64,000 nucleotides of DNA from IMGVR_UViG_3300036781_000418:124001-188000; one strand, 5' to 3'. Positions 15,870-63,219 are shown, counted from the first letter of the stretch. Program-made: numbers and translations. The notes: generated by a model not told the origin, from the sequence alone.

Positions 15870-16466
15870 ATGGATAAACATCTCGTCTTCATTCATGGGC
15901 TCAACGCCACGAGCAACTCCTTCAACTACCTTACGGCGAAGCTGAACCTTCCAAGTGAGCGCGTGACGTGCATCAACTACACGTCTCAGCAGGAGCTGCT
16001 GCTTTCACTGCACCAAGTCGATGAACTGCTCCCATCAAGTGGGGAGCTCGTTCTCATTGGGCACTCGCTTGGCGGCATCATCTCAACGTTGCTGGCCCAC
16101 AAGTACCCAGAGCGCGTCAAGCAGGTGATCACGATCGCCTCGCCGTTCGGTGGATCGAAGGCGGCCATCTTCATGCAGTGGATTCCTGGTACGTCACCTG
16201 TACTGCAGGACATTACGCCGTACTCACGGCTCATCAAGCTGTCACAGTCCAAGCCGGCCGCGCTGGTTCACTCCATCATCACGCAGGGTGCGTCCATCAT
16301 CGGCTCGTCGGAGCCCAGTGACGGCGTCATCACGGTCGCTTCGCAGCTTATGACGCCCGCGGGCAAGCATACGGCGAAGATTAGATCCAACCACTTCGAG
16401 GTGCTGATGATGCCGCGCACCGCTAAACTAATCCAAAAAATTCTGGAGATCAAACCACATGGGTAA
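15870..16466 (+). CDS. Alpha/beta hydrolase (lipase/esterase-like)
   Basis: VFIHGL, GHSLGG nucleophile elbow, SDGVITV and a C-terminal NHFEVL His. TAAATA at 15860-15865. Confidence 0.85.
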   Translation: MDKHLVFIHGLNATSNSFNYLTAKLNLPSERVTCINYTSQQELLLSLHQVDELLPSSGELVLIGHSLGGIISTLLAHKYPERVKQVITIASPFGGSKAAIFMQWIPGTSPVLQDITPYSRLIKLSQSKPAALVHSIITQGASIIGSSEPSDGVITVASQLMTPAGKHTAKIRSNHFEVLMMPRTAKLIQKILEIKPHG

Positions 16467-32183: not shown

Positions 32184-32246
32184 TTCGATGGGGGCTTGGT
32201 CCCCCATCTCGAGTTGTAAACCTCGCCATCCAATTAGAATGACACC

Positions 32247-45236: not shown

Positions 45237-45280
45237 TTGCCAACTGGGGTGATAGAGGTACGATGCCTCTATCACCCCAG
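45237..45280 (+). promoter_or_regulatory. Sigma70-like promoter with the -10 box in the loop of a 15-bp inverted repeat
   Basis: TTGCCA-N16-TACGAT; arms ctggggtgatagagg (45244-45258) and cctctatcaccccag (45266-45280). Confidence 0.6.
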
Positions 45281-45289
45281 AGGCATTTC

Positions 45290-47297: not shown

Positions 47298-47708
47298 ATG
47301 ATAATCTACCACGCTTCACCGACACAGCTGGCCAGCTTCGGGCCAACCCCTGCCTGGTTTTCCACTAACACCCGTGACGCCGCGGGTTGGCATAAAGCCG
47401 GTGGCCAGGTGAAAAGCTACACGCACATCTGCACCTTCGCCGGCGTTATCGCGCCGATCACGACCGTGGTTGAGCTCGCCAAGCGGGTGTGGCCGAACGA
47501 CGAGTTCATCTACTCGATGCTGGACCCGCACATCGGCGAGTTTGAGGTGAGCAAGATCGAGGAGTTTGTCCGAGTGCTCAAGGTTGCCGGGTTTGACGCG
47601 GCCTATGTTGAGGACTACGACCCGCACGACTTCGAGCACGGTCGAACCATCAGCATGTGCGTCCTTAACCCGTCGAGCACGGTGCAGGTTCAGATCTTCA
47701 TGGAGTAA
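47298..47708 (+). CDS. ADP-ribosyltransferase-fold-like protein (tentative)
   Basis: IYHAS...F...AWFSTN...A..W and AGFDAAYV...CVLNP resemble the YHG/FFT/GYDG pattern of ART-PolyVal-like domains. Confidence 0.4.
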   Translation: MIIYHASPTQLASFGPTPAWFSTNTRDAAGWHKAGGQVKSYTHICTFAGVIAPITTVVELAKRVWPNDEFIYSMLDPHIGEFEVSKIEEFVRVLKVAGFDAAYVEDYDPHDFEHGRTISMCVLNPSSTVQVQIFME

Positions 47709-47726
47709 CGTACCCTGGTGCGGTGA

Positions 47727-47769
47727 TGTACAACGTGGGGCTGGTGTCTTAAAATGGCACCAGCCCCAC
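47727..47769 (+). promoter_or_regulatory. Sigma70-like promoter with the -10 box in the loop of a 12-bp inverted repeat
   Basis: TGTACA-N17-TAAAAT; arms gtggggctggtg (47735-47746) and caccagccccac (47758-47769). Confidence 0.6.
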
Positions 47770-47784
47770 AACCGTTTACACACC

Positions 47785-49152
47785 ATGAACTTCGCCGACG
47801 TCCTGAAAACCTGTGAACAAGCCAGTGGTGCTGGCTCCAAGAAGGTCATCAAGGAGGCCTTGGGTCGCTTTGACGCGACTTCACGTCGCTTGATGTACTA
47901 CCTGTTCAACCCGTTCTACACGTTCGGCGTCAAGAAGTACGATCAACCAATCTGTCACACGGTCAACGAAAATGACCTGGACACCGCGATCAACGAGCTC
48001 TTCCTGACGCTGGACCAACTCCGCAACCGCGAGCTGACGGGCAACGCCGCCCGCAACGCCGTGACGGACATTCTCGAGCTCTTCACCGAGGACACGGCCA
48101 AGTACATCGCCCGTGTGATCGACAAGGACCCACAAGCTGGGTTCTCCAACGAGACCTACAACAAGGTCTGGCCTGACGATCCAGTGCCAATCTTCTCCGT
48201 GATGCTGGCCGACAAGTTGGCCGTGACGGAGACCGAGGCCGACGACGGTGGTGACGACTTTGACCAGATCGTCTACCCCATCTGGTCGGACGTGAAGTAC
48301 GACGGTGAACGCAACCTCTGCATCGTCAAAGAAACCGACATCACCTACCTGTCGCGCTCGGGCTTGGAAGCCGAGCACATGTACGGCCTGTTCGACGAAG
48401 AGCTCATCAAGATCCGCGCACACCTTGGCTATGACTTCGTGATGGACGGTGAACGGATGGCCGCCTCCTACATCGACACGATCAACGCCAAGAAGTCTGG
48501 CGCTGAGGGTGAGGTTGGTAAGAAGGCCATGCGCTTCCGAGTCTTCTTCATGATGTCGCTTGACAACTGGAACGCTCAGCAGTGCGCCACCACGATGCGC
48601 CAGAACCGTGCCAACCTCACCGCCATCTTCGCGGCCTGTGAGTGCGTCAAGCTGACCCAGACCGTTGGCCGTGAAGTCGTCGACCATGACGACATGATGA
48701 GCCACCTCGACGAGGTCACCAAGCCCGGTTACGACGGCCAGAAGAAAGGCCACGAGGGTTTGATCCTCAAGCAGTACGAAGCCTTGTACTCATGGGACCG
48801 CTCCATGTCATGGTGCAAGGTCAAGAAGTTCTACGAGGTGGACGTTCGCATCATGACCTACGAGATGGGTCGCAAGTCCCTGTCGCACACCATCGGTCGT
48901 GTCAACTACGTCGGCTTCCTTGAAGACGGTCGTCGTGTTGAAGGTGGCGTTGGATCTGGTCTGCGCCTGAAGTCGCGCAACGACGGCGCCCCAACCCGTG
49001 ACGAGCTGCTCGCCAACTGGGAGAAGTACGAAGGTACGACCATGGTGCTGAAGTACCAGGAAGTCTCGAAGGCCAAGGACAAGCAAGTCCTCAGCCTGCG
49101 CTTCCCCACGGTCTTCCGTTTCCGCGACGACAAGATCATCAACGTTGACTGA
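47785..49152 (+). CDS. lig: ATP-dependent DNA ligase
   Basis: VMLA, VKYDGER (adenylated Lys), YLSRSG, VMDGE, EGLILK, WCKVK and SLRFPTV. Confidence 0.93.
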   Translation: MNFADVLKTCEQASGAGSKKVIKEALGRFDATSRRLMYYLFNPFYTFGVKKYDQPICHTVNENDLDTAINELFLTLDQLRNRELTGNAARNAVTDILELFTEDTAKYIARVIDKDPQAGFSNETYNKVWPDDPVPIFSVMLADKLAVTETEADDGGDDFDQIVYPIWSDVKYDGERNLCIVKETDITYLSRSGLEAEHMYGLFDEELIKIRAHLGYDFVMDGERMAASYIDTINAKKSGAEGEVGKKAMRFRVFFMMSLDNWNAQQCATTMRQNRANLTAIFAACECVKLTQTVGREVVDHDDMMSHLDEVTKPGYDGQKKGHEGLILKQYEALYSWDRSMSWCKVKKFYEVDVRIMTYEMGRKSLSHTIGRVNYVGFLEDGRRVEGGVGSGLRLKSRNDGAPTRDELLANWEKYEGTTMVLKYQEVSKAKDKQVLSLRFPTVFRFRDDKIINVD

Positions 49153-52436: not shown

Positions 52437-52832
52437 ATGTCAAGATACCGTAACGACAACAGTGCCGGCGTTGCTATCCTCGCGGTGCTGTTTATCATCC
52501 TCGCCTTCTGTGGCGTCGTCGGTGCCATTGGCACCGCGATCTACTTCCAGTTCTCAACGATCATGCATGGGGTGCTGGCCCTAACCAACTGGGTGCCAAC
52601 GATGGGGGTCAAGACCGGAATCTTCGTCGGCACCTGCCTCATCATGTTGTACTTCCGAGCGTTGTACACGTTCGGTGGCATGGCGCTGGGTTGGTTCGTG
52701 TTGGGCATGTCCTGGTGGCAACCGCCGTTGATCTTCTTCCCGTTCATCGCCTTCGCCCTCTTCGGTACGTCGCTTCTCGCGGCCGTCACGCTGCTGGGTT
52801 CGGTGGTCGTTGACTTTTTCGATCGGAGATAA
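52437..52832 (+). CDS. Multi-TM membrane protein
   Basis: About four hydrophobic segments. Confidence 0.65.
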   Translation: MSRYRNDNSAGVAILAVLFIILAFCGVVGAIGTAIYFQFSTIMHGVLALTNWVPTMGVKTGIFVGTCLIMLYFRALYTFGGMALGWFVLGMSWWQPPLIFFPFIAFALFGTSLLAAVTLLGSVVVDFFDRR

Positions 52833-52835
52833 TTC

Positions 52836-54173
52836 ATGTCACGTAAGCTAGTTTCAGTCCGCACCATCGACGCGCTGCGCCCGATTCCCGGTGCGGACGC
52901 CATCGAGGTCGCAACCATCGGCGGCTGGGAGCTCGTGGTGAAGCGTGGCGAGTTCGAAGTGGGGGTCCCATGCCTGTACTTCGAGATCGACTCATTCCTA
53001 CCCAAGCACGTTCCGGCCTTCAGCTTCCTAATGACTCGTGGACTGCGCACCTTTGAGGGCGTCGAAGGCCACAAGCTGAAGACGATCCGCCTGCGTGGTC
53101 AGCGTTCGCAAGGCCTGGCCCTGCCGCTTACCATGTTCGCCTTCATGGAGCCGCTGCTCCGCGGTGTCCAAACAACGGACGAGGAGCTGGCCAACTACTG
53201 GCTGCCCGCCGAGAAGATTCCAATGTGGCGGGAGTACTTCTTCGGCATGCACGAGTACGAGGCCGCCCTGGCTCCACAGGACTTTGACTGGGCGCCGATG
53301 TTCGACGTGGTGAAGTGGGAAGTTGAACTGCCCGCCAGCTTGAAGGGTCAGGCCAAGGGCACGTTCCCGTCGTTCATCCGCAAGACGGACCAAGAGCGCT
53401 GCCAGAACATGAAGCAGGAGATCTTCGGTTCCCCTGACGAGACGTACGTGTTTGACGTCTCCACGCTGCCACAGGAGGCGATCGACGCGATGCTCCAGAA
53501 GGGTCACCTCCAAGTGATCAACGGCATCTACCACCGCATCGTGTCGGGGTTGGCTGGCCAAGATCCTGACACCGTGTACGAAGTCACGTTGAAGGTGGAC
53601 GGTTCGTCGTTCACCGCCTACGTCAAGGCCGACGACGATGGCAACGTGGTCACGGGTGTCTGCAGTCGGAACCTTGAGCTGAAGGTGAACGACGAGAACA
53701 AGGACAACGCGTTCGTCAAGATGTTCGTGGAGAGCGGTCTCCAGGCCGCGATGATCGAGATGTACAACAACCCAAACAACCACATTCCGGACGGTCGCCC
53801 ATTCGCGTTTGCGGTGCAGGGTGAGTTGATGGGGCCTGGCATTCAGAGCAACCGTGAAGGCTTCACGGAGAACAAGCTGTTCGTGTTCGACATCTTCGAC
53901 ATCAACCAAGGGTTCTACATGCCGCCGATGTTCCGACACGACGTCGTAGAGGAGCTGCAGAAGTTGGGCGCCAAGCTTGAACACGTGCCGATTCTCGACG
54001 CTTGCGCAAAGCTGTCCGACCTCGGGCTGCACGACATCGCGTCGATCTTGGCCTTCGCCAATGGCCCCAGCATCAACAACCCGGTTCGGGAAGGCGTCGT
54101 CTTCAAGCGCATGGACGGTCAGTTCAGCTTCAAGGCGATCAGCAACCTGTACCTGGAAATGGAGAAGGACTGA
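52836..54173 (+). CDS. ATP-dependent RNA ligase (DRB0094/Rnl5-like)
   Basis: N-terminal IPGADAIE..GGW..VV..YFEIDS; KTDQER, TLKVDGSS (motif I), CSRN, QGEL.GPGIQ.N, FVFDI, REGVVFK and SFKAISN. Confidence 0.92.
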   Translation: MSRKLVSVRTIDALRPIPGADAIEVATIGGWELVVKRGEFEVGVPCLYFEIDSFLPKHVPAFSFLMTRGLRTFEGVEGHKLKTIRLRGQRSQGLALPLTMFAFMEPLLRGVQTTDEELANYWLPAEKIPMWREYFFGMHEYEAALAPQDFDWAPMFDVVKWEVELPASLKGQAKGTFPSFIRKTDQERCQNMKQEIFGSPDETYVFDVSTLPQEAIDAMLQKGHLQVINGIYHRIVSGLAGQDPDTVYEVTLKVDGSSFTAYVKADDDGNVVTGVCSRNLELKVNDENKDNAFVKMFVESGLQAAMIEMYNNPNNHIPDGRPFAFAVQGELMGPGIQSNREGFTENKLFVFDIFDINQGFYMPPMFRHDVVEELQKLGAKLEHVPILDACAKLSDLGLHDIASILAFANGPSINNPVREGVVFKRMDGQFSFKAISNLYLEMEKD

Positions 54174-54313
54174 TGGAACCGAACAAGATGCTCGTTGAGC
54201 TCTTCGGCGGCATTATGGTCAGGCTCGCGATCGTCGCGGCGATCGGTGCCGTGTCCACGTTTGCCTGGATTATCTACGGCCTAGTGCACCTCATCAGGTA
54301 CATCGTGACCTGA
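54173..54313 (+). CDS. Small membrane peptide
   Basis: 46 aa, hydrophobic, overlapping the ligase stop. Confidence 0.45.
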   Translation: MEPNKMLVELFGGIMVRLAIVAAIGAVSTFAWIIYGLVHLIRYIVT

Positions 54314-54407: not shown

Positions 54408-55061
54408 ATGTGGGACAAACTCAAGGGTTTGGTCATTGAGTCGGATCCGGCCCCCGCCGCGTCCGCACCTCAAGTGGCCGCACCTGGAAAACCGTTGGTG
54501 ACACCAATGGGCAGCACTCCGATCACGTTCACTCCGCCTGGTGTGAACATGGACTTCGTCAACGCGATCAAGAAGGCGATCTTCAGCCGGCCGAGCGCGT
54601 ACCTCACGCTCCTGGAGGCGTCCACGAAGTTGGAGGCCTTCATCGCGGATCCGAACATGCGGATGAAAGCCGCGTGGCAGACTTCGGGTGGTGGTCGCTC
54701 CGCACAGGAAGTCGTGAACGCGGTCACCGCCCACTTGGCGGACGTGGACGGTGAAGAACGCAAGTTCAACGTCGCCGTACAGAACCAGATTCAGACGGCC
54801 GTCGGCACGTTGGTCAACCAAGCCGCCACGCTGCGACAGGACAATGACAACTGCCGCAAGCAGGTCGAACAGCTGACACAGCAGATCACCCAGCTCAACG
54901 ACCGCGTCACGCAACAAGACACGATGGCCTTGCAGCTCGACGGTCAAATCACCGACTCGCGCGCGAAGCTGGATCAGTCCTCCAACGAGTTCAAGGTCGC
55001 CGCACAGGTCGTGCGTGACGAGCTCTCCGCCCACCGCACCACCATCACCTCCACCCTTTAA
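54408..55061 (+). CDS. Coiled-coil protein
   Basis: Pro/Ala linker, small helical domain and a long Gln-rich heptad C-terminus. Confidence 0.75.
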   Translation: MWDKLKGLVIESDPAPAASAPQVAAPGKPLVTPMGSTPITFTPPGVNMDFVNAIKKAIFSRPSAYLTLLEASTKLEAFIADPNMRMKAAWQTSGGGRSAQEVVNAVTAHLADVDGEERKFNVAVQNQIQTAVGTLVNQAATLRQDNDNCRKQVEQLTQQITQLNDRVTQQDTMALQLDGQITDSRAKLDQSSNEFKVAAQVVRDELSAHRTTITSTL

Positions 55062-55070
55062 GGTACCACC

Positions 55071-56090
55071 ATGTCGAATGAACTGACAACGCAACAAGCG
55101 AAGTCCTTCTGGGCTCGCCCAGAAGGCAAGACGGGTATGCTCGCCATCGCGGGCGGTGGCGTCGGCCTCTGGCTCGCCGGCCCCTTCCTCATCGGCCTCT
55201 TCGCGACGGCCATCACCCTCGTCGGCCAGGCGATCACGCTGACGATTCTCGGCGCGATCCTCTTCGCGCTGTGGATGATCTTGTCGAACAAGAAGTTCCA
55301 GACGCTGGTCTCCTACTTCTTCAAGTCCGCGATGCGCTCCCTCACCGGTGTGATCGTGGAGATCGATCCGATCGGCATCATGAAGTCGTACGTCGAGGAC
55401 ATGAAGAAGAAGCGCGACGTCATCTCCGAGGCGCGCGACAAGCTCAACGGCCAGGTGAAGAACCTCGAGCAGAAGATTCGCGACAACGACAGTGGTCGTG
55501 AAAACGCGATGGCCAAGGCGAAGGTTGCACAGGAAAAGGGCATGGGCGCCGCGCTTCAAGTGCAGGCCCGCCAAGCTGGCCGCCTGGAAAAGCTGAACGA
55601 AGGCAGCTTCAAGCCGATGCTCGCCAAGATGAACGCGCACAAGAAGGCGTTGGACAAGTACTACGAGGTCACGGGCATCGTGATCGAGGACTTGCAGAAC
55701 GAAGTTGAGATGCGCGAGATCCAGCGCAAGACCATCTTGGCCTCGTACTCCGCGATGAAGGCGGCTTCCGCGATCATCAACGGCGGCACGAACGAGAAGG
55801 AGCTCTTCGACCAAGCCACTGAGTTCGTCGCGATGGACTACGCCGCGAAGCTGGGTGAGATCGAGTCCTTCATCGAGAACTCGCAAGGCTTCGTCGACGG
55901 CATCGACATCGAGAACGGCGTCTACGAGGCGTCCGCCCTCAAGAACCTCGAGCTGTGGGAAGGTTCCGACTCCATCCTGCTCGGTCATGGCAAAGCGGCG
56001 CTGGTTCAAGCTGACCTGAGCGTCTCGCCGCTGACCACCAAGATCGGCAACGACTCGCTGGACTACGCAACGCTGCTGTCCCGCAAATAA
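55071..56090 (+). CDS. Membrane-anchored coiled-coil protein (PspA/IM30-like tendency)
   Basis: Two N-terminal TM segments followed by about 250 aa of heptad-rich helices. Confidence 0.7.
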   Translation: MSNELTTQQAKSFWARPEGKTGMLAIAGGGVGLWLAGPFLIGLFATAITLVGQAITLTILGAILFALWMILSNKKFQTLVSYFFKSAMRSLTGVIVEIDPIGIMKSYVEDMKKKRDVISEARDKLNGQVKNLEQKIRDNDSGRENAMAKAKVAQEKGMGAALQVQARQAGRLEKLNEGSFKPMLAKMNAHKKALDKYYEVTGIVIEDLQNEVEMREIQRKTILASYSAMKAASAIINGGTNEKELFDQATEFVAMDYAAKLGEIESFIENSQGFVDGIDIENGVYEASALKNLELWEGSDSILLGHGKAALVQADLSVSPLTTKIGNDSLDYATLLSRK

Positions 56091-56191
56091 GTATGGTCCC
56101 TGGCAGCCGCTCCTTGGCTGCCAGCATAGAATGACCTACGCCTCTGAGCGTGTATTAGCGTGTTCAACACTTCAAACCTGAGGGTTTAATC

Positions 56192-57934
56192 ATGGGAAAA
56201 CTGAAGACACTCCCCAAAGCCATCATCGGACTTATCGTCATCGGTGGTGTCGCTTTCGGAGTCAACACCGCCATCAACAAAGGCTACTTCAAGCAGAAAA
56301 CTGAAGTGGCCGTCCAGGTGCCGGACAAGATCGACGGCCTTGGTGGTGGCATCACCTCCACCGCACCGAAACCGACCGCAACCACAGCCATCAACGTGAT
56401 GGCCGCCACAACGGGTGAGACCCTCCGCGTGAAGACCATTCCGTGGAACGGCACGCTTGGCCTGATGCACGCCCAAGCGTCCGGCGCCTTCCGTGCCCAC
56501 AACCTCAACGTGGACATCAAGCGTGAAGACGACTACTCCAAGATGATCGCCGACATGGCGGCCTTCGCGAAGGATCCGACGCAAGGTGTTCACTTCACGG
56601 TGATCATGGGTGACGGCCTGCCGGCCTACATCATCGGCCTGAACGAGGCGCTCAAGCCCTTCGGTCAGCAGGCTGAAATGATCGCGGGTATCGGCTACTC
56701 GCGTGGTGAGGACAAGTGCGTGATCGCGGACGAGGCCAACCCTCGCGGTGCCCTGATCGCCGGCGTCCTTGGTGACGGCGACATCAACATCTGCATCAAG
56801 TACGCCGCGGACAACGCCATCCCGATCAACGCCAACCCGAAGACCTACGACCCCGACGCCATGAACTTCATGGGCACCGGCTCGTTCGTTGAAGCGGACG
56901 AGAAGTTCATCTCCTCGGCCCGCAACAACTACAAGGGTGGTGCGTGTGAAGAGCGCAAGAACACGAAGACCGGTGACAAGCAGACGGTCTGTGTCACGGG
57001 CTCGGCCACCTGGACTCCCGGTGACGTGAAGGACTTCAGCGAGCTGAAGAAGCTTGGCAAGTCGCTTCGTGTGATCGGCTCTACCAAGGAGTACGCATGG
57101 CAGATGCCAGCCGCGATCATCGGCAACAAGACGTGGATGGCCAACAACCGCCCGACGGTCGAAGCCTTCCTCGCCTCCATCCTTGAATCCGGTGAGAAGG
57201 TCCGCGGTGACAACCAAGCGCTGATGGTCGCCTCCGCCGAACAGGCCAAGGTGATCGGTGAGCAGGACGCTAGCTACTGGGCTGAAATGTTCAAGGGCAC
57301 GACGGACGTTAGCCCCAACGGCAAGACGATTCAGCTTGGTGGCTCCACCACCAACGGTCTCTCGGACGCGGCCTTCATGTTCGGCTTGAACGGAGCGGAC
57401 GACCTCTACTCCAAGGTGTACAACGTGTACGGCAAGATCTCGGTGAAGTACTTCCCCGACCTCATGCCCGGCGGTCTCCGCCCATACGGCGACGTCGTAA
57501 ACAAGTCGTTCATCCAAGCGTTGCTCGCCAAGGCCACCAACGTCGCGCAGGTCGACAAGCCGGTTTACTCCAGCACGACGACTGAAACCTTCGCGGCCAA
57601 GTCGTACGCCATCGAGTTCGAAACCGGCAAGGCCACCTTCTCGCCCTCCGCGGTCAAGGTGCTGAACGACCTGTTGGATCAAGCCGCCGTGACGACGCTG
57701 AACGTGCAGATCAACGGCCACACGGACAACACTGGTGATTCTGGCACGAACATCGGGCTGTCCAAGGACCGAGCCGAAGCGGTGAAGAACTTCCTGATGA
57801 AGAACGCACCGTCCACCTTCACGGCCGAACGTGTCCAAACGCGCGGCTACGGTGACACGCAACCGATCGCGGACAACAACACCGTCGCGGGCAAGGCCAA
57901 GAACCGCCGCGTTGAGGTTATCCTCCGCAAGTAA
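56192..57934 (+). CDS. ABC-type substrate-binding domain fused to a C-terminal OmpA/MotB peptidoglycan-binding domain
   Basis: N-terminal TM anchor and an NMT1/THI5-like body (YSRGEDK, TWTPGD); C-terminal FETGKA, INGHTDNTG, NIGLSKDRAEAV, RGYG and NRRVE. Confidence 0.88.
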   Translation: MGKLKTLPKAIIGLIVIGGVAFGVNTAINKGYFKQKTEVAVQVPDKIDGLGGGITSTAPKPTATTAINVMAATTGETLRVKTIPWNGTLGLMHAQASGAFRAHNLNVDIKREDDYSKMIADMAAFAKDPTQGVHFTVIMGDGLPAYIIGLNEALKPFGQQAEMIAGIGYSRGEDKCVIADEANPRGALIAGVLGDGDINICIKYAADNAIPINANPKTYDPDAMNFMGTGSFVEADEKFISSARNNYKGGACEERKNTKTGDKQTVCVTGSATWTPGDVKDFSELKKLGKSLRVIGSTKEYAWQMPAAIIGNKTWMANNRPTVEAFLASILESGEKVRGDNQALMVASAEQAKVIGEQDASYWAEMFKGTTDVSPNGKTIQLGGSTTNGLSDAAFMFGLNGADDLYSKVYNVYGKISVKYFPDLMPGGLRPYGDVVNKSFIQALLAKATNVAQVDKPVYSSTTTETFAAKSYAIEFETGKATFSPSAVKVLNDLLDQAAVTTLNVQINGHTDNTGDSGTNIGLSKDRAEAVKNFLMKNAPSTFTAERVQTRGYGDTQPIADNNTVAGKAKNRRVEVILRK

Positions 57935-57977
57935 AAGTTACACGCTATGGTCGGGTTCCCTCCCTGACCATCTTTAT

Positions 57978-58006
57978 AGGACGAGTCGAAAGGCTCGTCC
58001 TTTTTT
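57978..58006 (+). terminator. Rho-independent terminator
   Basis: aggacgagtc-gaaa-ggctcgtcct followed by T6. Confidence 0.85.
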
Positions 58007-58024
58007 GACTCGTGAGCACCACCA

Positions 58025-58115
58025 GACGGCGACCGGTTGCACCCGAATATACGATGCACAGAGCACAACACCGTAGCCGGCCAGTGCCTCAGACGTCGCC
58101 TCGTGTCGCCGAACG
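58025..58115. ncRNA. Candidate structured element, copy B
   Basis: Reverse-complement homolog of 34833-34933. cggcgac and gtcgccg can close the domain. Confidence 0.45.
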
Positions 58116-58136
58116 ACGTACACCTGAATTCACTCG

Positions 58137-58165
58137 TTCACAACGGCTTGGCCGATCGTTATGAT
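58137..58165 (+). promoter_or_regulatory. Sigma70-like promoter for the permease/ATPase genes
   Basis: TTCACA-N17-TATGAT. Confidence 0.6.
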
Positions 58166-58194
58166 GGTCGAGCGTGTACTAACCGAGATCAACT

Positions 58195-58974
58195 ATGAAC
58201 GTTCTTGAACCCTACCACCTAGGACGGCGCTTCAACCTGAAGCTGCTGTCCGGCATCTCAGCTGGCGTGATGTTCGTCGCGTGGATGCTGGCTCCCGCCT
58301 CCACTGGCATTCCGTCGCCGCTCGCCATCGCGATAGCGTGGAACAACATGGCCTTGTCACAGGGCCTGTTGATCGAGCTGTTCAACTCGATGGTGGTGAT
58401 CTGGCAGGCCCTGCTGTTCTCCGCCATCCTGTCATGTGGCATCGCCTTCCTCACGACGGCCGACATCTTCAAGGGTGTTGGGACGTTCATCGCCTCACTC
58501 CGGTTTCTAGGGTTTGCCGGCCTGACGTTCCTGTTCACGCTGTGGACGAGCAGCGGCACGTCCCTGAAGCTCGCGCTCCTCACCTTCGGCATGACGGTGT
58601 TTCTGACGCGCTCCACGATCGACGTGATCAAGTCCATTCCGCAGTCGGACATCGACTACGCCCGTTCACTCGGGCTGAGTGGCTGGCGACTCGCGTGGGA
58701 GGTTGGTGCTTGCGGCAAGCAGGCGGACATGCTCGACCTGGTGCGCCAGAACGCGGCCATCGGTTGGACGTTGCTCTCCATGGTGGAGGGCCTTGTCCGA
58801 AGTGAAGGCGGTGTCGGTGCGATGTTGCTCAGCCAGAACAAGTACTTCAACCTCAGCGCGGTCTTCGCGATCCAACTCACCATCCTCGCCTACGGCATTC
58901 TGCAGGACGTGGCGTTGAGTTGGATCCGTGGCGTCATCTGCCCGTGGACGCGCATTAACCGGAGCGACGAATGA
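58195..58974 (+). CDS. ABC transporter permease (NitT/TauT-like)
   Basis: About six TM segments and an EAA-loop-like IDYARSLGLSGWRLAWEV. Confidence 0.85.
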   Translation: MNVLEPYHLGRRFNLKLLSGISAGVMFVAWMLAPASTGIPSPLAIAIAWNNMALSQGLLIELFNSMVVIWQALLFSAILSCGIAFLTTADIFKGVGTFIASLRFLGFAGLTFLFTLWTSSGTSLKLALLTFGMTVFLTRSTIDVIKSIPQSDIDYARSLGLSGWRLAWEVGACGKQADMLDLVRQNAAIGWTLLSMVEGLVRSEGGVGAMLLSQNKYFNLSAVFAIQLTILAYGILQDVALSWIRGVICPWTRINRSDE

Positions 58975-59366
58975 CCTTCGTTATCATCAACACCAACTTG
59001 GCGGTTCGCCCGGTCCGTGATCACCCCATTCCGAATCACCGTGACCGACTTGAAGTGCGCCCCCACCTGTGGAAGAACGAAAAAGGAGATGGGTGGTACT
59101 GTGCACGGAAACCGGCTGGCCACTCATACCCAGAATACTCGATCAACGGCATGGCGCCCACGGCGCTTGAAGCCTGGGCCAGGTGGAAGATACGAGACCA
59201 GCGCCGAGTTCGCATTCCTCGCGCTGGCATTCAGAACAAGCGTGATACGCGCAACTGGTTCTTCGACGGTTGCTTCTACATCAGCTCCTACATTTCGCAT
59301 GAAGGAGTTCTGCGCATCATCCACGGCTACGACCCAATCACCGACGAACTCATCTTGAGGGGCTAA
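58971..59366 (+). CDS. Hypothetical phage-type protein inside the ABC operon
   Basis: 131 aa, ATGA-coupled, rich in basic and aromatic residues. Confidence 0.5.
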   Translation: MTFVIINTNLAVRPVRDHPIPNHRDRLEVRPHLWKNEKGDGWYCARKPAGHSYPEYSINGMAPTALEAWARWKIRDQRRVRIPRAGIQNKRDTRNWFFDGCFYISSYISHEGVLRIIHGYDPITDELILRG

Positions 59367-59367
59367 C

Positions 59368-60162
59368 TTGAACTACGAGAAACACGAGCGACTCCTGACG
59401 GTCGACCACCTCAACCTGCAGTACGGTGAGAAGATCATTCTGCGTGACGTCAACGTCTGCATCGACAACATCACCCGCCCTGACACGGTGCAAGGCCAGG
59501 TGGTCGCGCTCCTTGGCCCATCGGGTATCGGTAAGACGCAGCTCTTCCGCTGCCTGTCGGGCATGCAGCAAGCGACCAACGGGCACGTGCTCATCGGTGA
59601 TCAGCAGCTGCAAGTCAACGGTGGTGAGGTTGGCGTGGTGCAGCAAGCCTACCCACTCTTCGCCCACCGTACGGTGCTCAGCAACCTGCGCCTGGCCGCC
59701 AGAAAACTTGGCAAAAACTCCGAGCCGGAGATTGAGCGGCTGCTCACCCACTTCGGACTGCAGGACAAGAAGAAGTCCTACCCCACCGAGCTGAGTGGCG
59801 GTCAGCGCCAACGCATCGCGATCATCCAGCAGCTGCTGTGTTCCAACCACTTCCTGCTCATGGACGAGCCGTTCAGCGGCCTTGACGTGATGGCGAAGCA
59901 GCGGGTGTTCGACACGATCCGCACCGTGAGTCAGGCTCATGACCTGAACACGATCATCTTCACGACACACGACCTGGAGGCGGCCGTGAACTTGGCCGAC
60001 AACATCTGGGTGCTTGGCCGAGTTGAAGGCCAGCCGGGCGCGACGATCGTGCAGCAGATTGACTTGGCCGCGGCCGGCCTTGCATGGTCGCCGGACATCG
60101 AGCACCACCCGAAGTATTGGCCCATGGTGTTGCAGCTCAAGGAGCTGTTCAAGCACCTTTAA
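59368..60162 (+). CDS. ABC transporter ATPase (NitT/TauT-like)
   Basis: GPSGIGKT, VVQQ, LSGGQRQR, LMDEPF and TTHD. TTG start. Confidence 0.93.
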   Translation: MNYEKHERLLTVDHLNLQYGEKIILRDVNVCIDNITRPDTVQGQVVALLGPSGIGKTQLFRCLSGMQQATNGHVLIGDQQLQVNGGEVGVVQQAYPLFAHRTVLSNLRLAARKLGKNSEPEIERLLTHFGLQDKKKSYPTELSGGQRQRIAIIQQLLCSNHFLLMDEPFSGLDVMAKQRVFDTIRTVSQAHDLNTIIFTTHDLEAAVNLADNIWVLGRVEGQPGATIVQQIDLAAAGLAWSPDIEHHPKYWPMVLQLKELFKHL

Positions 60163-60245
60163 CCTGGTCCGTGAACCTTCATTCGTGCATGTTCGAACGA
60201 CGGCTTACGGACTAAAATGAAGTACCTTTAACTAGGAGGCGTGTA

Positions 60246-60515
60246 ATGAAGCTTAAGACTTTCCCGAAGGTTGTGATTGGTTTGGTGGTGCTCGGCGTGG
60301 CCGGCTTTTTCTTGTCCAAACAGGACTTGAGCAAGCTCGTTCCGCCGAAGAAGGTCGAGGTGGTGGAGCAACAGCCCGCCCAAGACAGTCCACCGGTCGT
60401 GCAACAGCAAGAACCCGTCCAGCAGGATCCGCCTGCCGCTCAGCCGGCGCCGCAGCCCGCTCAACCAGCACAGCAGGACGCCGGTTTGGCGGCCGTGCTG
60501 GGCAAGAAGAAGTGA
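60246..60515 (+). CDS. Small membrane-anchored Gln/Pro-rich protein
   Basis: N-terminus MKLKTFPKVVIGLVVLG is homologous to that of 56192..57934. AGGAGG RBS. Confidence 0.65.
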   Translation: MKLKTFPKVVIGLVVLGVAGFFLSKQDLSKLVPPKKVEVVEQQPAQDSPPVVQQQEPVQQDPPAAQPAPQPAQPAQQDAGLAAVLGKKK

Positions 60516-60523
60516 GGTGAACC

Positions 60524-61150
60524 ATGGTCACACGTGCAAAGACAAGCACACCAGCCACGCTGGACAAGGCCACCAAGCCACTTTGGACTGCCTTGGACCC
60601 TGAGAACTACAAGGGTCCGAACTTTGACAAGGAACCGCTGAAGGGCCTTGGACTGTTGGTTCGCGACGAGGTCACCGGCTACACTGGCATGGTCACTCAA
60701 GTCAGCGTCCTGCTGAGCGGTAACGTCCAGTTCGCCGTTCAGCCGTCCTCCACCGACTGTGGGGTGACAATGCCCGACGCGATGCAGTTGGACGTACATT
60801 CGCTCAAGGCCGTCGGTGATGGTCTGTCGAAGACCGTCATCAAGGTGCCGAATCCGACGACCATTCCGCTCGGCGTCGAGGTTGAGGACATCATCACTGG
60901 TATTAAGGCGATAACGACCCAGAAGACCACGTTCATGAACGGCTGTGAGGTCTTCTTGCTTGAGGTCGCGTTGAAGAACCGCCAGCCACTGACGGAGTTT
61001 GCCCACCACATCAACGCCATCCGCCTCAAGGTAACTGGCAAGAATGACAAGACCAAGCAGCTCAACTTGCCGCCCGCTGACGACCGGGGCCGCCCTCCTG
61101 GTGGACCGAGCAAACGGCTCACCCACACTCCCACCACACGTCTCCGTTAA
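60524..61150 (+). CDS. Hypothetical protein with a tandem-duplicated small beta domain
   Basis: LGLLVRDEVTGYTGMVT..LSGNVQF versus LGVEVEDIITGIKAITT..MNGCEVF. Confidence 0.65.
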   Translation: MVTRAKTSTPATLDKATKPLWTALDPENYKGPNFDKEPLKGLGLLVRDEVTGYTGMVTQVSVLLSGNVQFAVQPSSTDCGVTMPDAMQLDVHSLKAVGDGLSKTVIKVPNPTTIPLGVEVEDIITGIKAITTQKTTFMNGCEVFLLEVALKNRQPLTEFAHHINAIRLKVTGKNDKTKQLNLPPADDRGRPPGGPSKRLTHTPTTRLR

Positions 61151-61159
61151 GGACCAACC

Positions 61160-62050
61160 ATGAAGAAGACACTTTCCCTGCTGCTCGGTGTTGTGCTGAG
61201 CATGGGTGCCCACGCCGCCTCAGTTGGCATCGCCAGCGGCAACACCACGGGCACCAACTACCCGATGGCCGAGGACATCAAGCGTGTGTGCAGCACGCCG
61301 CAGTCGCCGATCTATAACGTGGTGTCTGACGGTTCGGTGGACAACATCTTCAAGATCTACAACGACAAGTCCGTCCAGTACGGCATCATTCAAGCCGACG
61401 CACTGGTCTACCAGCAAGGCATCGACAAGAAGATGATGAGCAACATCTTGATGGTGTTCCCGTTCTTCTCGACGGAGATTCACCTGATCGTGAAGGACGG
61501 TGCGCCCATCACCGACATCAGCCAGCTGCGTGGCAAGCGCGTGGTTGAAGGTCCTGAAGGTTCCGGCACGTGGGTGACGGTGCAGGTGATCAAGGCCCTC
61601 ACCGGACTTCAGTGGACCGCCATCAACAAGAGCCAGCAGGACGGCTTCAACGCGGTGATGAGCAACCAAGCGGACGCTGAGTTTATTGTGGCTGGCGCGC
61701 CAATCAGCCTGCTGCAAAAGTCGACTGGGTTTCGCCTCGTGCCCATCAAGCACCCAGCGCTGGACGGCTTCAAGTTGTACACGAAGACGATGCTGAGCTC
61801 TGGCATGTACCCGTCGGTCCGTGGCACAGTGTCCACGTACAAGGTGGACAACGTGTTGGCGACGTACGCCTTCAAGAACCAATACCAGCGGGAGATTGGC
61901 GACCTCGTGACGTGCATCGCGAGGAACATCGGTGAACTCCAGCAGACTGGACATCCGAAGTGGCGTGACGTCGATCCGGCGGATATTAACCGGATTGACT
62001 GGCCTGCACATCCGGCCGCCGTCGCCGCCATCAAGCGCGTTTCCCGGTAA
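61160..62050 (+). CDS. TAXI-family TRAP solute-binding protein
   Basis: Signal peptide, IASGNTTGTNY, SDGSVDNI, YGIIQAD, TEIHLIV, QLRGKRV, GSGT and DAEFIVAGAP. Confidence 0.85.
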   Translation: MKKTLSLLLGVVLSMGAHAASVGIASGNTTGTNYPMAEDIKRVCSTPQSPIYNVVSDGSVDNIFKIYNDKSVQYGIIQADALVYQQGIDKKMMSNILMVFPFFSTEIHLIVKDGAPITDISQLRGKRVVEGPEGSGTWVTVQVIKALTGLQWTAINKSQQDGFNAVMSNQADAEFIVAGAPISLLQKSTGFRLVPIKHPALDGFKLYTKTMLSSGMYPSVRGTVSTYKVDNVLATYAFKNQYQREIGDLVTCIARNIGELQQTGHPKWRDVDPADINRIDWPAHPAAVAAIKRVSR

Positions 62051-62601: not shown

Positions 62602-63219
62602 ATGTCTGATGTGAACACAGCCCGAGAAAATGGCAAGAAGATCCTTCTGGTCTCTTCGCCAGTTCAAGCAATTCTGATGAACAAAGTGCTGATCGATGAG
62701 ATTCGATCCGGCTTTTGGGCGAATCACCGACCATCCGGCCATGGTGATCACTGGACTGAAGTCGAAGCGATCGTGTCGACGGACGGTCAACTCGGTCCGA
62801 TCAACTGGTCGGCACCACGCACCTACAACGTACTCAACCTCGACTTCTTCAACCCCAACGCTGACAAGCTCGTCGCGCTGGCCAAGTCCGTGAAGCCGAA
62901 CTCCAACGAGCGCTCCGTCAAGAAGGAGCTCATCGAACTTGGTCGCATCATCGGCGGCCGCCTGGCTTCGCGCACCTCCGAGCCGATCAAGCTCGAACGC
63001 GGCAACCACAAGCCTGGCACCTTGACCGCCTCGGTCCGCAAAGCCCGTGAAGCTGGTTGCACCTTGGCCGACGTGATCGCCCTCTCGAAAAGCGGTACGG
63101 CCGCCGCGAGCGTGAAGCCGAAGACGACCACCGTCAAGAAGCGCGTTGAAGACGCGGGTCTCGAACTTACCGGTGCGATCGCTGGTCCGATCACCCACGT
63201 CGCCGCCCTCGCCGAGTAA
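62602..63219 (+). CDS. Hypothetical protein with basic C-terminus
   Basis: 205 aa with phage codon usage. Confidence 0.7.
   Translation: MSDVNTARENGKKILLVSSPVQAILMNKVLIDEIRSGFWANHRPSGHGDHWTEVEAIVSTDGQLGPINWSAPRTYNVLNLDFFNPNADKLVALAKSVKPNSNERSVKKELIELGRIIGGRLASRTSEPIKLERGNHKPGTLTASVRKAREAGCTLADVIALSKSGTAAASVKPKTTTVKKRVEDAGLELTGAIAGPITHVAALAE

What the first reader, a model, noticed from the sequence alone, without database searches (positions are those of the whole stretch)
54408..62050. Phage-encoded envelope/transport locus: peptidoglycan-anchored ABC importer plus membrane coiled-coil proteins and a TAXI binding protein
Seen in sequence: nine co-directional genes inside an otherwise purely phage region. 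They encode a Gln-rich coiled-coil protein, a 2-TM coiled-coil protein, an NMT1-like binding domain fused to OmpA-C, a NitT/TauT-like permease and ATPase, a small anchored protein and a TAXI solute-binding protein. Established: these family motifs form a complete ABC importer in bacteria, and OmpA-C binds peptidoglycan. Complete ABC importers are uncommon in lytic phages. Inference: the module may import a nucleotide or cofactor precursor during infection. Alternatively, because the coiled-coil partners are not normal importer parts, it may be a membrane-integrity, stress-sensing or superinfection-exclusion machine. Codon style matches the flanking phage genes, and a phage-type ORF (58971..59366) is inserted mid-operon, which argues for long residence in the phage.
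Basis: partly seen in the sequence, partly recalled or inferred. Interest (0 to 1): 0.8.

Follow-up and report, generated by a model that had tools for sequence, protein, structure and literature searches.

The report
Jumbo-phage PspA-like membrane module with ABC importer
A giant phage carries a bacterial gene set that pairs a membrane-repair-type protein (PspA/ESCRT-III-like) with a cell-wall-tethered ABC importer; the set is real and conserved, has been captured by huge phages more than once, and has already been noted in two recent surveys.

Summary
The window is part of a 342.6-kb IMG/VR contig related to Ralstonia jumbo phage RsoM2USA.

Six genes form a conserved core: a coiled-coil protein, a 2-TM protein, an NMT1-type binding protein fused to OmpA-C, a permease, an ATPase and a TAXI protein. 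They keep this order in 11 related jumbo-phage contigs, with variable small ORFs inserted between them.

The 2-TM protein models as a PspA/Vipp1/ESCRT-III hairpin. Its sequence match to PspA is below threshold.

The first five core genes are a native bacterial chromosomal operon, found in Burkholderiales and Chitinophagaceae and in MAGs of other phyla. In Burkholderiales it often sits next to a DUF4118 histidine kinase and response regulator. Lak megaphages and a 462-kb phage also carry it, and an AU test rejects a single phage origin.

The TAXI protein and its membrane anchor are phage additions. RsoM2USA keeps the coiled-coil protein, PspA-like protein, anchor and TAXI but lacks the ABC genes.

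The most likely role is inner-membrane maintenance plus solute uptake during a long infection. Substrate and mechanism are untested. The operon type (Ravi 2024) and PspA-adjacent ABC systems in huge phages (Yuan & Chen 2026) are published, so this is a new member of a known kind.

The parts
54408..55061 (+). Cytoplasmic coiled-coil partner (217 aa). It has an N-terminal amphipathic motif (MWDKLKGLV), a Pro/Ala-rich disordered linker, a small three-helix head and one helix of about 118 residues.
   Evidence: AF2 model with pLDDT 83.6. No PDB fold match. The ESM Atlas lists 94 clusters of bacterial hypothetical proteins of about 230 aa. Orthologues lie directly upstream of the PspA-like gene in phages and bacteria. 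The Lak and RsoM2USA copies were confirmed by hhalign (98% and 97.6% probability).
55071..56090 (+). Membrane-anchored PspA/ESCRT-III-like protein (339 aa). It has an N-terminal conserved motif, a two-TM hairpin (about residues 23-72), a long helical hairpin and a conserved C-terminal region.
   Evidence: The top Foldseek PDB hits are almost all Vipp1, PspA or ESCRT-III (7o3w at E 5e-4; 4whe at TMt 0.80, rmsd 2.1). Pfam PspA_IM30 is the top hit but below threshold (E 0.017, residues 99-225 against profile positions 23-148). D99-P100 is conserved. The family has 1,569 representative clusters. The RsoM2USA orthologue was annotated as PspA in PMC8504454.
56192..57934 (+). Substrate-binding protein tethered at both ends (580 aa). 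It has an N-terminal TM anchor (KLKTLPK motif), a linker, an NMT1/SsuA-class periplasmic binding domain (about 75-426) and an OmpA-like peptidoglycan-binding domain (476-572).
   Evidence: The OmpA-domain residues D512 and R527 are invariant in alignment A3.
57978..58001 (+). Intrinsic-terminator-like hairpin after the binding-protein gene, followed by a promoter-like site at 58137-58165 ahead of the permease gene.
   Evidence: 10-bp stem with 6 G-C pairs and a T-run. This is a consensus match only.
58195..58974 (+). ABC importer permease of the NitT/TauT family (259 aa).
   Evidence: NCBIfam TauC/SsuC hits are weak. The family profile hits CmpB (9u9z, 1.3e-7) and NrtB (8w9m, 2e-5). A variant EAA loop is conserved in 65 homologues.
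58971..59366 (+). Window-specific inserted ORF (131 aa). It is not part of the conserved module.
   Evidence: It has no homologue in the related loci. Other small ORFs, or none, occupy this position in relatives.
59368..60162 (+). ABC ATPase (264 aa, TTG start) with intact catalytic motifs.
   Evidence: PF00005 at 96.8 bits. Walker A, Q-loop, LSGGQ, Walker B (DEP) and H-loop are at least 90% conserved across homologues.
60246..60515 (+). Small membrane anchor (89 aa): a TM helix with the KLKTFPK motif plus a Pro/Gln-rich linker. It is the split-off anchor of the TAXI protein.
   Evidence: It is fused to the TAXI N-terminus in L007 and L008 (356-369 aa). It is a separate ORF in the window, L004, L006 and RsoM2USA (gene 53). 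It is 42% identical over 43 aa to the anchor of the 580-aa protein (E 2e-4). The same motif occurs in proteobacterial orthologues.
60524..61150 (+). Window-specific inserted ORF (208 aa, phrog_16275, internal repeat). It is not part of the conserved module.
61160..62050 (+). Secreted TAXI-family solute-binding protein (296 aa, cleavable signal peptide). This is a phage-specific addition to the module.
   Evidence: TIGR02122 at 92.2 bits, above the 84.35 cut-off. PDB 1us4 at 6e-11. It is conserved at this position in the phage clade and in RsoM2USA (gene 52, 42% identity). It is absent next to the bacterial operons.

Best explanation
The locus is a bacterial envelope operon carried by a jumbo-phage lineage.

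The operon has five genes:
1. A cytoplasmic long coiled-coil protein.
2. A PspA/ESCRT-III-like protein held on the cytoplasmic face of the inner membrane by a two-TM hairpin. This replaces the usual amphipathic helix.
3. An NMT1-class binding protein anchored in the inner membrane at its N-terminus and bound to peptidoglycan by a C-terminal OmpA-like domain.
4. A NitT/TauT-type permease.
5. A catalytically intact ABC ATPase.

This phage lineage added a TAXI binding protein. Its membrane anchor is a paralogue of the anchor of the OmpA fusion, so TAXI probably docks at the same complex as a second ligand input.

Shown here: the gene content, the folds and families, conservation, bacterial origin and repeated capture by huge phages.

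Inferred: during the long latent period of a jumbo phage, the PspA-like protein and its coiled-coil partner stabilise or repair the inner membrane and so keep the proton-motive force. The tethered ABC importer brings in a small solute at the same site. The substrate is unknown; the nearest solved permease relatives carry bicarbonate and nitrate.
For: - Phage context and gene calls.
- The same six core genes lie in the same order in 11 IMG/VR contigs at 54-74% identity (30-41% for the coiled-coil protein), with variable inserts between them.
- The five-gene operon lies in isolate genomes of Burkholderiales and Chitinophagaceae with ordinary chromosomal flanks.
- A DUF4118 histidine kinase plus OmpR-type regulator is adjacent in two different arrangements.
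- PspA/Vipp1/ESCRT-III fold, and a below-threshold PspA_IM30 match in the same register.
- Independent sampling through the PspA-like family finds the same neighbours again.
- Lak megaphages and LR756500 carry the five genes.
- LR756500 nests inside Chitinophagaceae on the tree, and one phage clade is rejected (p-AU 4.6e-8).
- RsoM2USA keeps the coiled-coil protein, PspA-like protein, anchor and TAXI without the ABC genes.
- ATPase motifs are intact.
- Literature: Ravi et al. 2024 describe operons with a TM-bearing PspA/Snf7 homologue, an ABC ATPase, a permease and a PBPB-OmpA protein (PMC11237479). Yuan & Chen 2026 report PspA in 184 huge phages, 15 of them next to complete ABC transporters.
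Against: - The PspA assignment rests mainly on a model of modest quality. Mean pLDDT is 63.7, and only residues about 100-220 are confident. The Foldseek E-value is 5e-4, and long helical hairpins match promiscuously.
- Pfam PspA_IM30 is far below its cut-off (15.2 bits against 33.9). hhalign against E. coli PspA alone is not significant (E 0.09).
- No expression, localisation, interaction or transport data exist for any member.
- A terminator-like hairpin and a promoter-like site separate the first three genes from the permease and ATPase. In this phage the locus may therefore be two transcription units.
- A Runella-type bacterial variant lacks the PspA-like gene, and RsoM2USA lacks the ABC genes. 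The parts can therefore exist apart.
- TAXI proteins also occur alone in other Burkholderiaceae jumbo phages, so TAXI's link to the module could be positional only.
Confidence: 0.6

Rival explanations
1. The locus is a plain nutrient-acquisition auxiliary metabolic module. The ABC importer and TAXI protein scavenge a nitrogen, sulfur or carbon compound or a vitamin precursor for phage replication. The two helical proteins are unrelated neighbours.
For: The permease, ATPase and binding protein belong to the NitT/TauT / NMT1 class that imports nitrate, bicarbonate, taurine, sulfonates and thiamine precursors. ATPase motifs are intact. A terminator-like site separates the helical genes and binding-protein gene from the permease and ATPase. 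TAXI proteins recur in other jumbo phages.
Against: The coiled-coil and PspA-like genes sit directly upstream of the OmpA-fusion gene across several bacterial phyla and three huge-phage lineages. The binding protein is tethered to membrane and wall, which is not needed for simple scavenging. RsoM2USA kept the helical pair and lost the importer.
Confidence: 0.2
2. The locus is a superinfection-exclusion or anti-phage envelope machine. The wall-tethered membrane complex blocks DNA entry by other phages, in the way Zorya uses a MotB-like peptidoglycan-binding subunit.
For: It is a phage-encoded membrane complex with a peptidoglycan-binding domain. The OmpA part matches ZorB models at domain level (4.5e-13), and the ATPase matches generic defence ABC/AAA models.
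Against: The PADLOC hits are domain-level only, and no system-specific component matches. The bacterial copies lie among housekeeping genes with a two-component regulator, not in defence islands or prophages. The family is broadly and vertically distributed within Burkholderiales and Chitinophagaceae.
Confidence: 0.07
3. The locus is host DNA mis-assembled into a phage contig, or a passenger with no function for the phage.
For: The genes are of bacterial type, and GC3 is at the upper end of the phage range.
Against: Eleven independent phage contigs from different samples share the locus, most of them with the same phage genes on either side. All core ORFs are intact at 54-74% identity. Codon usage matches the phage. 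Two short MAG contigs with near-phage sequences (L016, L017) look like mis-binned phage fragments, not the reverse.
Confidence: 0.02

Closest known systems
Bacterial operons with a TM-bearing PspA/Snf7 homologue, an ABC ATPase, a permease and a PBPB-OmpA protein, described by comparative genomics in Ravi, Anantharaman, Aravind, Gennaro et al., mSystems 2024 (PMC11237479)
   Same: A PspA/ESCRT-III-like protein with a TM segment, an ABC ATPase, a permease and a solute-binding protein fused to OmpA, in one operon. That paper also proposes a link between membrane remodelling and solute transport.
   Different: That description includes an AAA+ ATPase, which is absent here. The coiled-coil partner family, the DUF4118 kinase/regulator association and the phage copies are not described there. 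Nothing has been tested experimentally.
Huge-phage PspA loci reported by Yuan & Chen, bioRxiv, 24 Oct 2026 (10.64898/2026.10.24.761521)
   Same: PspA encoded by huge phages, with complete ABC transporters (binding protein, ATPase, permease) next to 15 of 189 pspA genes. They propose a role in mitigating membrane stress.
   Different: It is a survey-level observation. In the passages read it gives no OmpA fusion, TM anchoring of the PspA-like protein, coiled-coil partner, TAXI/anchor addition, bacterial donor operon or independent-capture analysis. I could not check whether this contig is among their 15.
Classical PspA / Vipp1 (IM30) of the Psp response (E. coli pspABCDE; PDB 4whe, 7abk, 6zvr, 7o3w)
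   Same: Predicted helical-hairpin ESCRT-III-type fold, an Asp-Pro motif at the start of helix 1, and location on the cytoplasmic face of the inner membrane.
   Different: The sequence match is below the family threshold. A two-TM hairpin replaces the amphipathic helix alpha-0. There is a conserved extra C-terminal region, and there are no PspB, PspC or PspF partners.
NrtABCD / CmpABCD and TauABC / SsuABC importers (NitT/TauT family)
   Same: The permease profile hits CmpB and NrtB. The ATPase hits the SsuB, TauB and NrtD class. The binding domain is NMT1/NMT1_2 class.
   Different: The binding protein has a TM anchor and a C-terminal OmpA-like domain. The EAA loop is a family-specific variant. 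The substrate is unknown.
TAXI-TRAP solute-binding proteins (e.g. Thermus TT1099, PDB 1us4; phage RSL1 'TRAP transporter solute receptor like protein')
   Same: The 296-aa protein passes the TIGR02122 and PF16868 thresholds.
   Different: No TRAP membrane subunit is encoded in the locus. In part of the clade the protein is fused to a TM anchor paralogous to that of the ABC binding protein.

Membership tests
PspA/IM30/ESCRT-III superfamily (339-aa protein) | ESCRT-III-type fold: a long alpha1-alpha2 hairpin followed by further helices | tested here: met
   17 of the top 18 Foldseek PDB hits are Vipp1, PspA or ESCRT-III. The best is 7o3w at E 5e-4; 4whe gives TMt 0.80 and rmsd 2.1 A over 121 columns. 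Caveat: model pLDDT is 63.7 overall and above 80 only for residues about 100-220.
PspA/IM30/ESCRT-III superfamily (339-aa protein) | Sequence match to Pfam PF04012 PspA_IM30 at the gathering threshold | tested here: not met
   15.2 bits against a cut-off of 33.9 (E 0.017). It is the top family and is matched by 5 of 30 members, in register with the conserved Asp-Pro motif. hhalign against E. coli PspA gives E 0.09.
PspA/IM30/ESCRT-III superfamily (339-aa protein) | N-terminal amphipathic helix alpha-0 for membrane binding | tested here: not met
   It is replaced by a two-TM hairpin at about residues 23-72.
PspA/IM30/ESCRT-III superfamily (339-aa protein) | Polymerisation into rings or rods on membranes | not testable with these tools
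   This needs purification with EM, or multimer modelling.
PspA(TM)-ABC-PBPB/OmpA operon type of Ravi et al. 2024 | A TM-bearing PspA/Snf7 homologue next to an ABC ATPase, a permease and a binding protein fused to OmpA | tested here: met
   The same arrangement occurs in the bacterial loci.
PspA(TM)-ABC-PBPB/OmpA operon type of Ravi et al. 2024 | An associated AAA+ ATPase | tested here: not met
   No AAA+ gene lies in the window locus or in the bacterial operons examined.
NitT/TauT-family type I ABC importer | ATPase with Walker A, Q-loop, LSGGQ signature, Walker B with catalytic Glu, and H-loop | tested here: met
   All are present and at least 90% conserved across homologues. PF00005 scores 96.8 bits.
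NitT/TauT-family type I ABC importer | Permease homologous to NrtB/CmpB/TauC/SsuC with an EAA coupling loop | tested here: met
   The profile hits CmpB (1.3e-7) and NrtB (2e-5). NCBIfam TauC/SsuC hits are far below the equivalog cut-offs. The EAA loop is present as the conserved variant D-[HY]-[AC]-R-[TS]-L...W...E...G.
NitT/TauT-family type I ABC importer | Cognate binding protein of the NMT1/SsuA/NrtA class | tested here: met
   9 of 10 family members hit PF09084 (best 2e-8) and 2 hit PF13379 (3e-10). The window protein alone is below threshold (E 0.032). The Atlas gives structural TM 0.70-0.77 to NMT1 binding proteins.
NitT/TauT-family type I ABC importer | Demonstrated substrate uptake | not testable with these tools
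   No ligand can be inferred from sequence. This needs binding and uptake assays.
OmpA-like peptidoglycan-binding domain (PF00691) | Domain match above threshold, with conserved Asp and Arg in the TD...R motif. Identifying these as the residues that contact diaminopimelate rests on my knowledge of Pal/OmpA structures. | tested here: met
   65.6 bits against 27.2. PDB OmpA-like domains match down to 2e-26. D512 and R527 are invariant in alignment A3. Peptidoglycan binding itself was not tested.
TAXI-TRAP solute-binding proteins | Match to TIGR02122 / PF16868 above threshold | tested here: met
   92.2 bits against 84.35, and 68.9 against 27. PDB TAXI structures match.
TAXI-TRAP solute-binding proteins | Adjacent TRAP membrane component (fused DctQM) | tested here: not met
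   No such gene lies in 54408-62050 or in the flanking ORFs. The rest of the 342-kb contig was not examined.
Known anti-phage defence systems (PADLOC) | System-specific protein models matched by several components | tested here: not met
   Only domain-level hits were found: the ZorB OmpA part and generic ABC/AAA ATPases.

The most novel reading that the evidence does not exclude
The 'importer' may not be mainly a nutrient pump. It may be the sensing and energising half of a membrane-remodelling machine. In this reading the binding protein, stretched between inner membrane and peptidoglycan, reports a periplasmic ligand or the membrane-to-wall distance (turgor). The ABC ATPase would play the role that Vps4 plays for ESCRT-III, controlling assembly or turnover of the TM-anchored PspA-like polymer together with the coiled-coil partner. 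Huge phages would have captured this machine repeatedly to hold the envelope together during long infections. This lineage would have added a second sensor by grafting the same membrane anchor onto a TAXI protein.
Probability: 0.12. Interest if true: 0.8.

Novelty: new member of a known kind. Interest (0 to 1): 0.45.

Why it matters
PspA/ESCRT-III proteins are ancient membrane-repair and remodelling factors. How they are regulated when no AAA+ ATPase is present is an open question.

This operon family links a permanently membrane-anchored PspA-like protein to a wall-tethered ABC system. It is large: 1,569 representative clusters for the PspA-like protein alone. It spans several phyla and has no experimental data at all.

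It has moved into huge phages at least twice. That argues for a benefit to phages with long latent periods, and it gives a way to test the idea: RsoM2USA is a cultured phage with a natural 'minus-ABC' version.

For phage biology it adds a concrete, dissectable case to the recent claim that huge phages manipulate host envelope physiology. However, the arrangement itself has already been pointed out in two papers, so the gain here is detail and testability, not discovery.

Tried and rejected
- Megablast of the locus against 50,697 phage records found nothing, so no close sequenced relative exists.
- Sequence searches of the PspA-like and coiled-coil families against PDB chains gave only generic coiled-coil noise.
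- Foldseek of the coiled-coil model gave no match (best E 1.4), so its fold is unassigned.
- hhalign of the PspA-like family against E. coli PspA as a single sequence was not significant.
- A tblastn for diverse PspA sequences in plasmids, meant to build a PspA profile, returned almost only copies about 93% identical. I abandoned that route.
- The representative-library search listed only strong family members, so it could not bridge to canonical PspA.
- Searching PDB with the full-length OmpA fusion was swamped by OmpA domains. The domain-only profile gave only marginal SsuA/TauA hits (E 0.2-0.4).
- PADLOC gave no system-level hit, so I rejected the defence-system reading.
- I considered and rejected a prophage or mobile-element origin for the bacterial copies, after Pfam annotation of flanks in Undibacterium, Niastella, a Massilia MAG, Serratia and Albitalea.
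- I considered that the 89-aa ORF was a chance ORF. I rejected this because it is conserved, and because it is fused to TAXI in part of the clade.
- One Pfam call failed on wrong reading frames and was repeated correctly.
- No tRNA genes are in the window.

Full report
**1. What is in the sequence**

The window is phage DNA. PHROG and Pfam searches identify these genes:
- portal, 3975-5714
- major capsid protein, 7661-8947
- large terminase, 16459-17997
- UvsX-like recombinase and a helicase
- class I ribonucleotide reductase, 29712-33404
- DNA ligase, 47566-49152
- RNA ligase, 52836-54173

No tRNA genes were found, and no near-identical DNA exists among 50,697 phage records. A scan of IMG/VR showed that the window belongs to contig IMGVR_UViG_3300036781_000418, which is 342,591 bp. 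By capsid protein, the closest cultured relative is Ralstonia jumbo phage RsoM2USA (52.5% aa identity). Next come the Stenotrophomonas CM1/RAS14 and Xanthomonas XacN1 group.

Alignment with homologues puts the start of the first gene at 54408 (MWDKLKG...), not at the upstream ATG at 54375.

**2. What each protein is**

Coiled-coil protein, 54408-55061 (217 aa):
- No Pfam, NCBIfam or PHROG assignment beyond coiled-coil noise.
- The AF2 model (pLDDT 83.6) shows a short N-terminal amphipathic helix, a disordered Pro/Ala-rich linker, three short helices and one helix of about 118 residues.
- It has no structural match in the PDB.
- The ESM Atlas places it among 94 clusters of bacterial hypothetical proteins of about 230 aa.

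PspA-like protein, 55071-56090 (339 aa):
- It has two TM segments at about residues 23-72 followed by long helices.
- Its AF2 model is only moderately confident overall (pLDDT 63.7), but residues about 100-220 are above 80.
- Against the PDB, its top hits are almost exclusively Vipp1, PspA and ESCRT-III structures: 7o3w at E 5e-4, 6zvr, 7abk, CHMP proteins, and 4whe at TMt 0.80 and rmsd 2.1 A.
- At sequence level PspA_IM30 is the best Pfam family but is well below threshold (15.2 bits against 33.9). Residues 99-225 align to profile positions 23-148, starting at the conserved Asp-Pro motif.
- hhalign against E. coli PspA alone is not significant, although it finds the same register.
- The RsoM2USA authors annotated the orthologue (ORF54) as 'Phage shock protein A', from a BLAST hit to a Lewinella protein of that name (PMC8504454).
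- I therefore treat it as a divergent, TM-anchored member of the PspA/ESCRT-III superfamily. The fold criterion is met and the sequence criterion is not.

Binding protein fused to OmpA, 56192-57934 (580 aa):
- It has an N-terminal TM anchor and a linker.
- It has a periplasmic binding domain of the NMT1/SsuA class. Nine of 10 family members hit PF09084 (best 2e-8), two hit NMT1_2, and the Atlas gives TM 0.70-0.77 to NMT1 binding proteins.
- It has a clear OmpA-like C-terminal domain: PF00691 at 65.6 bits, and PDB OmpA-like domains down to 2e-26. Asp512 and Arg527 are invariant in the family alignment. From my knowledge of Pal/OmpA structures these are the peptidoglycan-contacting pair; that was not tested here.

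Permease, 58195-58974: its family profile hits the solved CmpB and NrtB permeases. It keeps a family-specific version of the EAA coupling loop.

ATPase, 59368-60162: an ABC ATPase with all catalytic motifs intact and conserved.

TAXI protein, 61160-62050: a bona fide TAXI-family binding protein with a signal peptide.

**3. Conservation in phages**

Eleven further IMG/VR contigs, up to 350 kb, carry the same six genes in the same order: coiled-coil protein, PspA-like protein, OmpA fusion, permease, ATPase and TAXI. Identities to the window are 54-74%, and 30-41% for the coiled-coil protein. The RNA ligase lies upstream in 10 of the 11, and a conserved 205-aa gene lies downstream in the 9 that reach that far.

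Different small ORFs are inserted between the core genes in different contigs. In two contigs the permease and ATPase genes have no ORF between them. The window's ORFs at 58971-59366 and 60524-61150 have no counterpart elsewhere and are inserts of this kind.

Codon usage of the core genes matches the rest of the phage. This rules out an assembly chimera and shows long residence under purifying selection.

**4. The 89-aa ORF and the TAXI protein**

The 89-aa ORF (60246-60515) is conserved. In the L007/L008 branch of the clade, the same TM helix plus Pro/Gln-rich linker is fused to the N-terminus of TAXI (356-369 aa). In the window, L004, L006 and RsoM2USA (gene 53) it is a separate gene, and TAXI carries its own signal peptide.

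Its N-terminal motif (M-KLKT-x-PK-hydrophobic) is a paralogue of the anchor of the OmpA fusion: 42% identity over 43 aa, E 2e-4 within the window. The same motif is conserved in proteobacterial orthologues of the OmpA fusion.

I infer that TAXI is brought to the same membrane site as the ABC binding protein. This is an inference, not a demonstrated fact. TAXI proteins without this context also occur in other jumbo phages of Burkholderiaceae: RSL1, RP12/RP31, FLC and Achromobacter Motura.

**5. Bacterial origin**

I scanned one genome per GTDB species with the binding-domain alignment. This returned 61 loci. Wherever the contig extends far enough, the OmpA fusion is followed by the permease and the ATPase.

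In Burkholderiales the PspA-like gene lies directly upstream, and in most loci the coiled-coil gene is detectable before it. The genomes include Scleromatobacter, Albitalea, Caballeronia, Undibacterium, Massilia and Collimonas, and also Serratia microhaemolytica. Identities to the phage proteins are 35-58%.

Chitinophagaceae have the same five genes with the same sizes. These include Niastella, Longitalea, Flavisolibacter, Ilyomonas, Ferruginibacter and Sediminibacterium. A Patescibacteria MAG has them too.

The flanks are ordinary chromosomal genes:
- Undibacterium: a POT transporter, RtcB, cyclophilin and thiolase.
- Niastella: ketoacyl synthase, peptidase S10 and MacB.
- A Massilia MAG: malonate genes and a LysR regulator.

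In many Burkholderiales a DUF4118-type histidine kinase and an OmpR-type regulator are adjacent. In some the kinase also has the KdpD N-terminal domain. The pair is either divergent upstream or downstream on the same strand. Two arrangements with the same partner suggest functional linkage and hint at osmotic or ionic-stress control. That is inference.

A Runella-type variant has the coiled-coil gene directly before the OmpA fusion, with no PspA-like gene.

Sampling the other way gave the same picture. A profile of the PspA-like family finds 1,569 representative clusters. The three members whose contigs I inspected again had neighbours of matching size and order. The OmpA protein was confirmed in two of them and the ABC ATPase in one; the third contig was too short to annotate.

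**6. Other huge phages**

The uncultured 462-kb phage LR756500.1 carries all five genes. Its coiled-coil and PspA-like proteins are 34% and 49% identical to those of Niastella.

Lak megaphages of Prevotella also carry all five. The PspA-like protein, OmpA fusion and ATPase were found by tblastn. The coiled-coil protein and permease were confirmed by hhalign at 98% and 98.7% probability.

On a maximum-likelihood tree of the OmpA fusion, LR756500 nests inside Chitinophagaceae. The window's clade forms separate deep branches near two Oxalobacteraceae sequences. Forcing the window clade and LR756500 into one clade costs 480 log-likelihood units (p-AU 4.6e-8). I named that group after seeing the tree, which weakens the test formally.

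At least two transfers between bacteria and huge phages are therefore needed. Lak sits on a very long branch and cannot be placed.

RsoM2USA has the coiled-coil gene (gene 55; hhalign 97.6%), the PspA-like gene (gene 54), the anchor (gene 53) and TAXI (gene 52; 42% identity). It has no OmpA fusion, permease or ATPase. Given the bacterial operon structure, loss of the three ABC genes is the simpler reading.

**7. How it most likely works**

Shown: the topology and families of the parts. The coiled-coil protein, the PspA-like domain and the ATPase are cytoplasmic. The binding domain, the OmpA domain and TAXI are periplasmic. The OmpA fusion spans from the inner membrane to the wall.

Inferred:
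- The PspA-like protein, fixed in the membrane by its TM hairpin, forms ESCRT-III-type assemblies with or regulated by the coiled-coil partner. These stabilise the inner membrane.
- The ABC system imports a small solute at the same site, or senses it.
- For the phage, the benefit would be keeping the host membrane energised through a long latent period. RsoM2USA has a latent period of 270 min (abstract of PMC8504454).

A terminator-like hairpin at 57978-58001 and a promoter-like site at 58137-58165 lie between the binding-protein and permease genes. They may set different expression levels or separate two transcription units. They are consensus matches only.

Rivals: a pure nutrient-import reading, a superinfection-exclusion reading and an artefact reading are weighed in their own sections. 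The first remains possible, the second has no positive evidence, and the third is contradicted.

**8. Comparison with what is known, and novelty**

Ravi et al. [quoted passage not shown] They suggest a link between remodelling and transport.

Yuan & Chen (bioRxiv, Oct 2026) report pspA in 184 huge phages, with complete ABC transporters next to 15 of them.

My literature searches found no experimental study of this operon. The library is limited to open-access papers and preprints.

The finding is therefore a new, well-resolved member of a known kind. The added points are:
- the coiled-coil partner family
- the TM hairpin in place of helix alpha-0
- the absence of an AAA+ ATPase
- the kinase/regulator neighbour
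- the phage-specific tethered TAXI with a duplicated anchor
- the natural ABC-less variant in a cultured phage
- evidence for repeated capture

**9. Verdict**

Confidence in the identity and origin of the parts is about 0.85. Confidence in the physiological role is about 0.4. I give 0.6 for the explanation overall.

Interest is moderate (0.45). The system is uncharacterised and testable, but its outline is already in the literature.

Noticed in passing
window 54173-54313 (+): A 46-aa ORF encodes a single-TM peptide (MEPNKMLVELFGGIMVRLAIVAAIGAVSTFAWIIYGLVHLIRYIVT). Its ATG overlaps the RNA-ligase stop codon by one base (TGATG), and it lies just upstream of the module. I did not check whether it is conserved in relatives.
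   Followed up: partly
window 52437-52832 (+): A 131-aa, very hydrophobic, multi-TM protein lies directly upstream of the RNA ligase. tblastn found no homologue in the related loci.
   Followed up: partly
window 57978-58001 and 58137-58165 (+): A strong terminator-like hairpin (10-bp stem, T-run) and a 10/12 sigma-70-like promoter lie in the 260-nt gap between the binding-protein and permease genes. In relatives this gap holds variable small ORFs.
   Followed up: partly
window 819-3956 (+): A 1,045-aa ORF immediately upstream of the portal gene has no PHROG match at E 1e-3.
   Followed up: no
window 52836-54173, 47566-49152, 45263-46378 (+): The phage encodes an RNA ligase (PHA02142 OB domain plus RNA_ligase), an ATP-dependent DNA ligase and a nucleotidyltransferase close together. 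This may be an RNA/DNA repair set.
   Followed up: no
window 62602-63219 (+): A 205-aa protein with no family match lies downstream of TAXI in the 9 related jumbo-phage contigs that extend that far (49-65% identity). It is absent from the bacterial operons.
   Followed up: partly
L016 and L017 (MAG contigs JBHIVS010000199.1 and NZ_JAZQPV010000103.1): Two short contigs binned into a Pseudobdellovibrionaceae MAG and an Acinetobacter MAG carry module genes 52-76% identical to the window's. They branch inside the phage clade. L017 even has the start of the TAXI gene. They are probably phage fragments mis-binned as bacterial.
   Followed up: partly
L032 2672-5771 (-); L030 11251-13646 (+); and equivalents: A DUF4118 histidine kinase (with a KdpD N-terminal domain in Undibacterium) plus an OmpR-type regulator lies next to the bacterial operon in two different arrangements across Burkholderiales. 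No kdpABC genes are beside it. It may be the operon's dedicated regulator.
   Followed up: partly
L054 6867-9551 (Runella MAG) and L073, L076: In the Runella locus L054 the coiled-coil gene is directly followed by the OmpA-fusion gene, with no PspA-like gene between them. L073 and L076 look alike by tblastn positions. This is a four-gene variant of the operon.
   Followed up: partly
L077 (ENA contig_73048, 45.7 kb): Another contig has the PspA-like gene, OmpA fusion, permease-sized gene and ABC ATPase embedded in a long run of small co-directional unknown ORFs. It looks phage-like and may be a further phage lineage with the module.
   Followed up: no
phage records H74-H82 (RSL1, RP12/RP31, FLC1-1B/FLC4-3B, Achromobacter Motura): TAXI-type binding proteins recur in several unrelated jumbo phages of Burkholderiaceae and Alcaligenaceae hosts. 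I did not examine their gene contexts.
   Followed up: no
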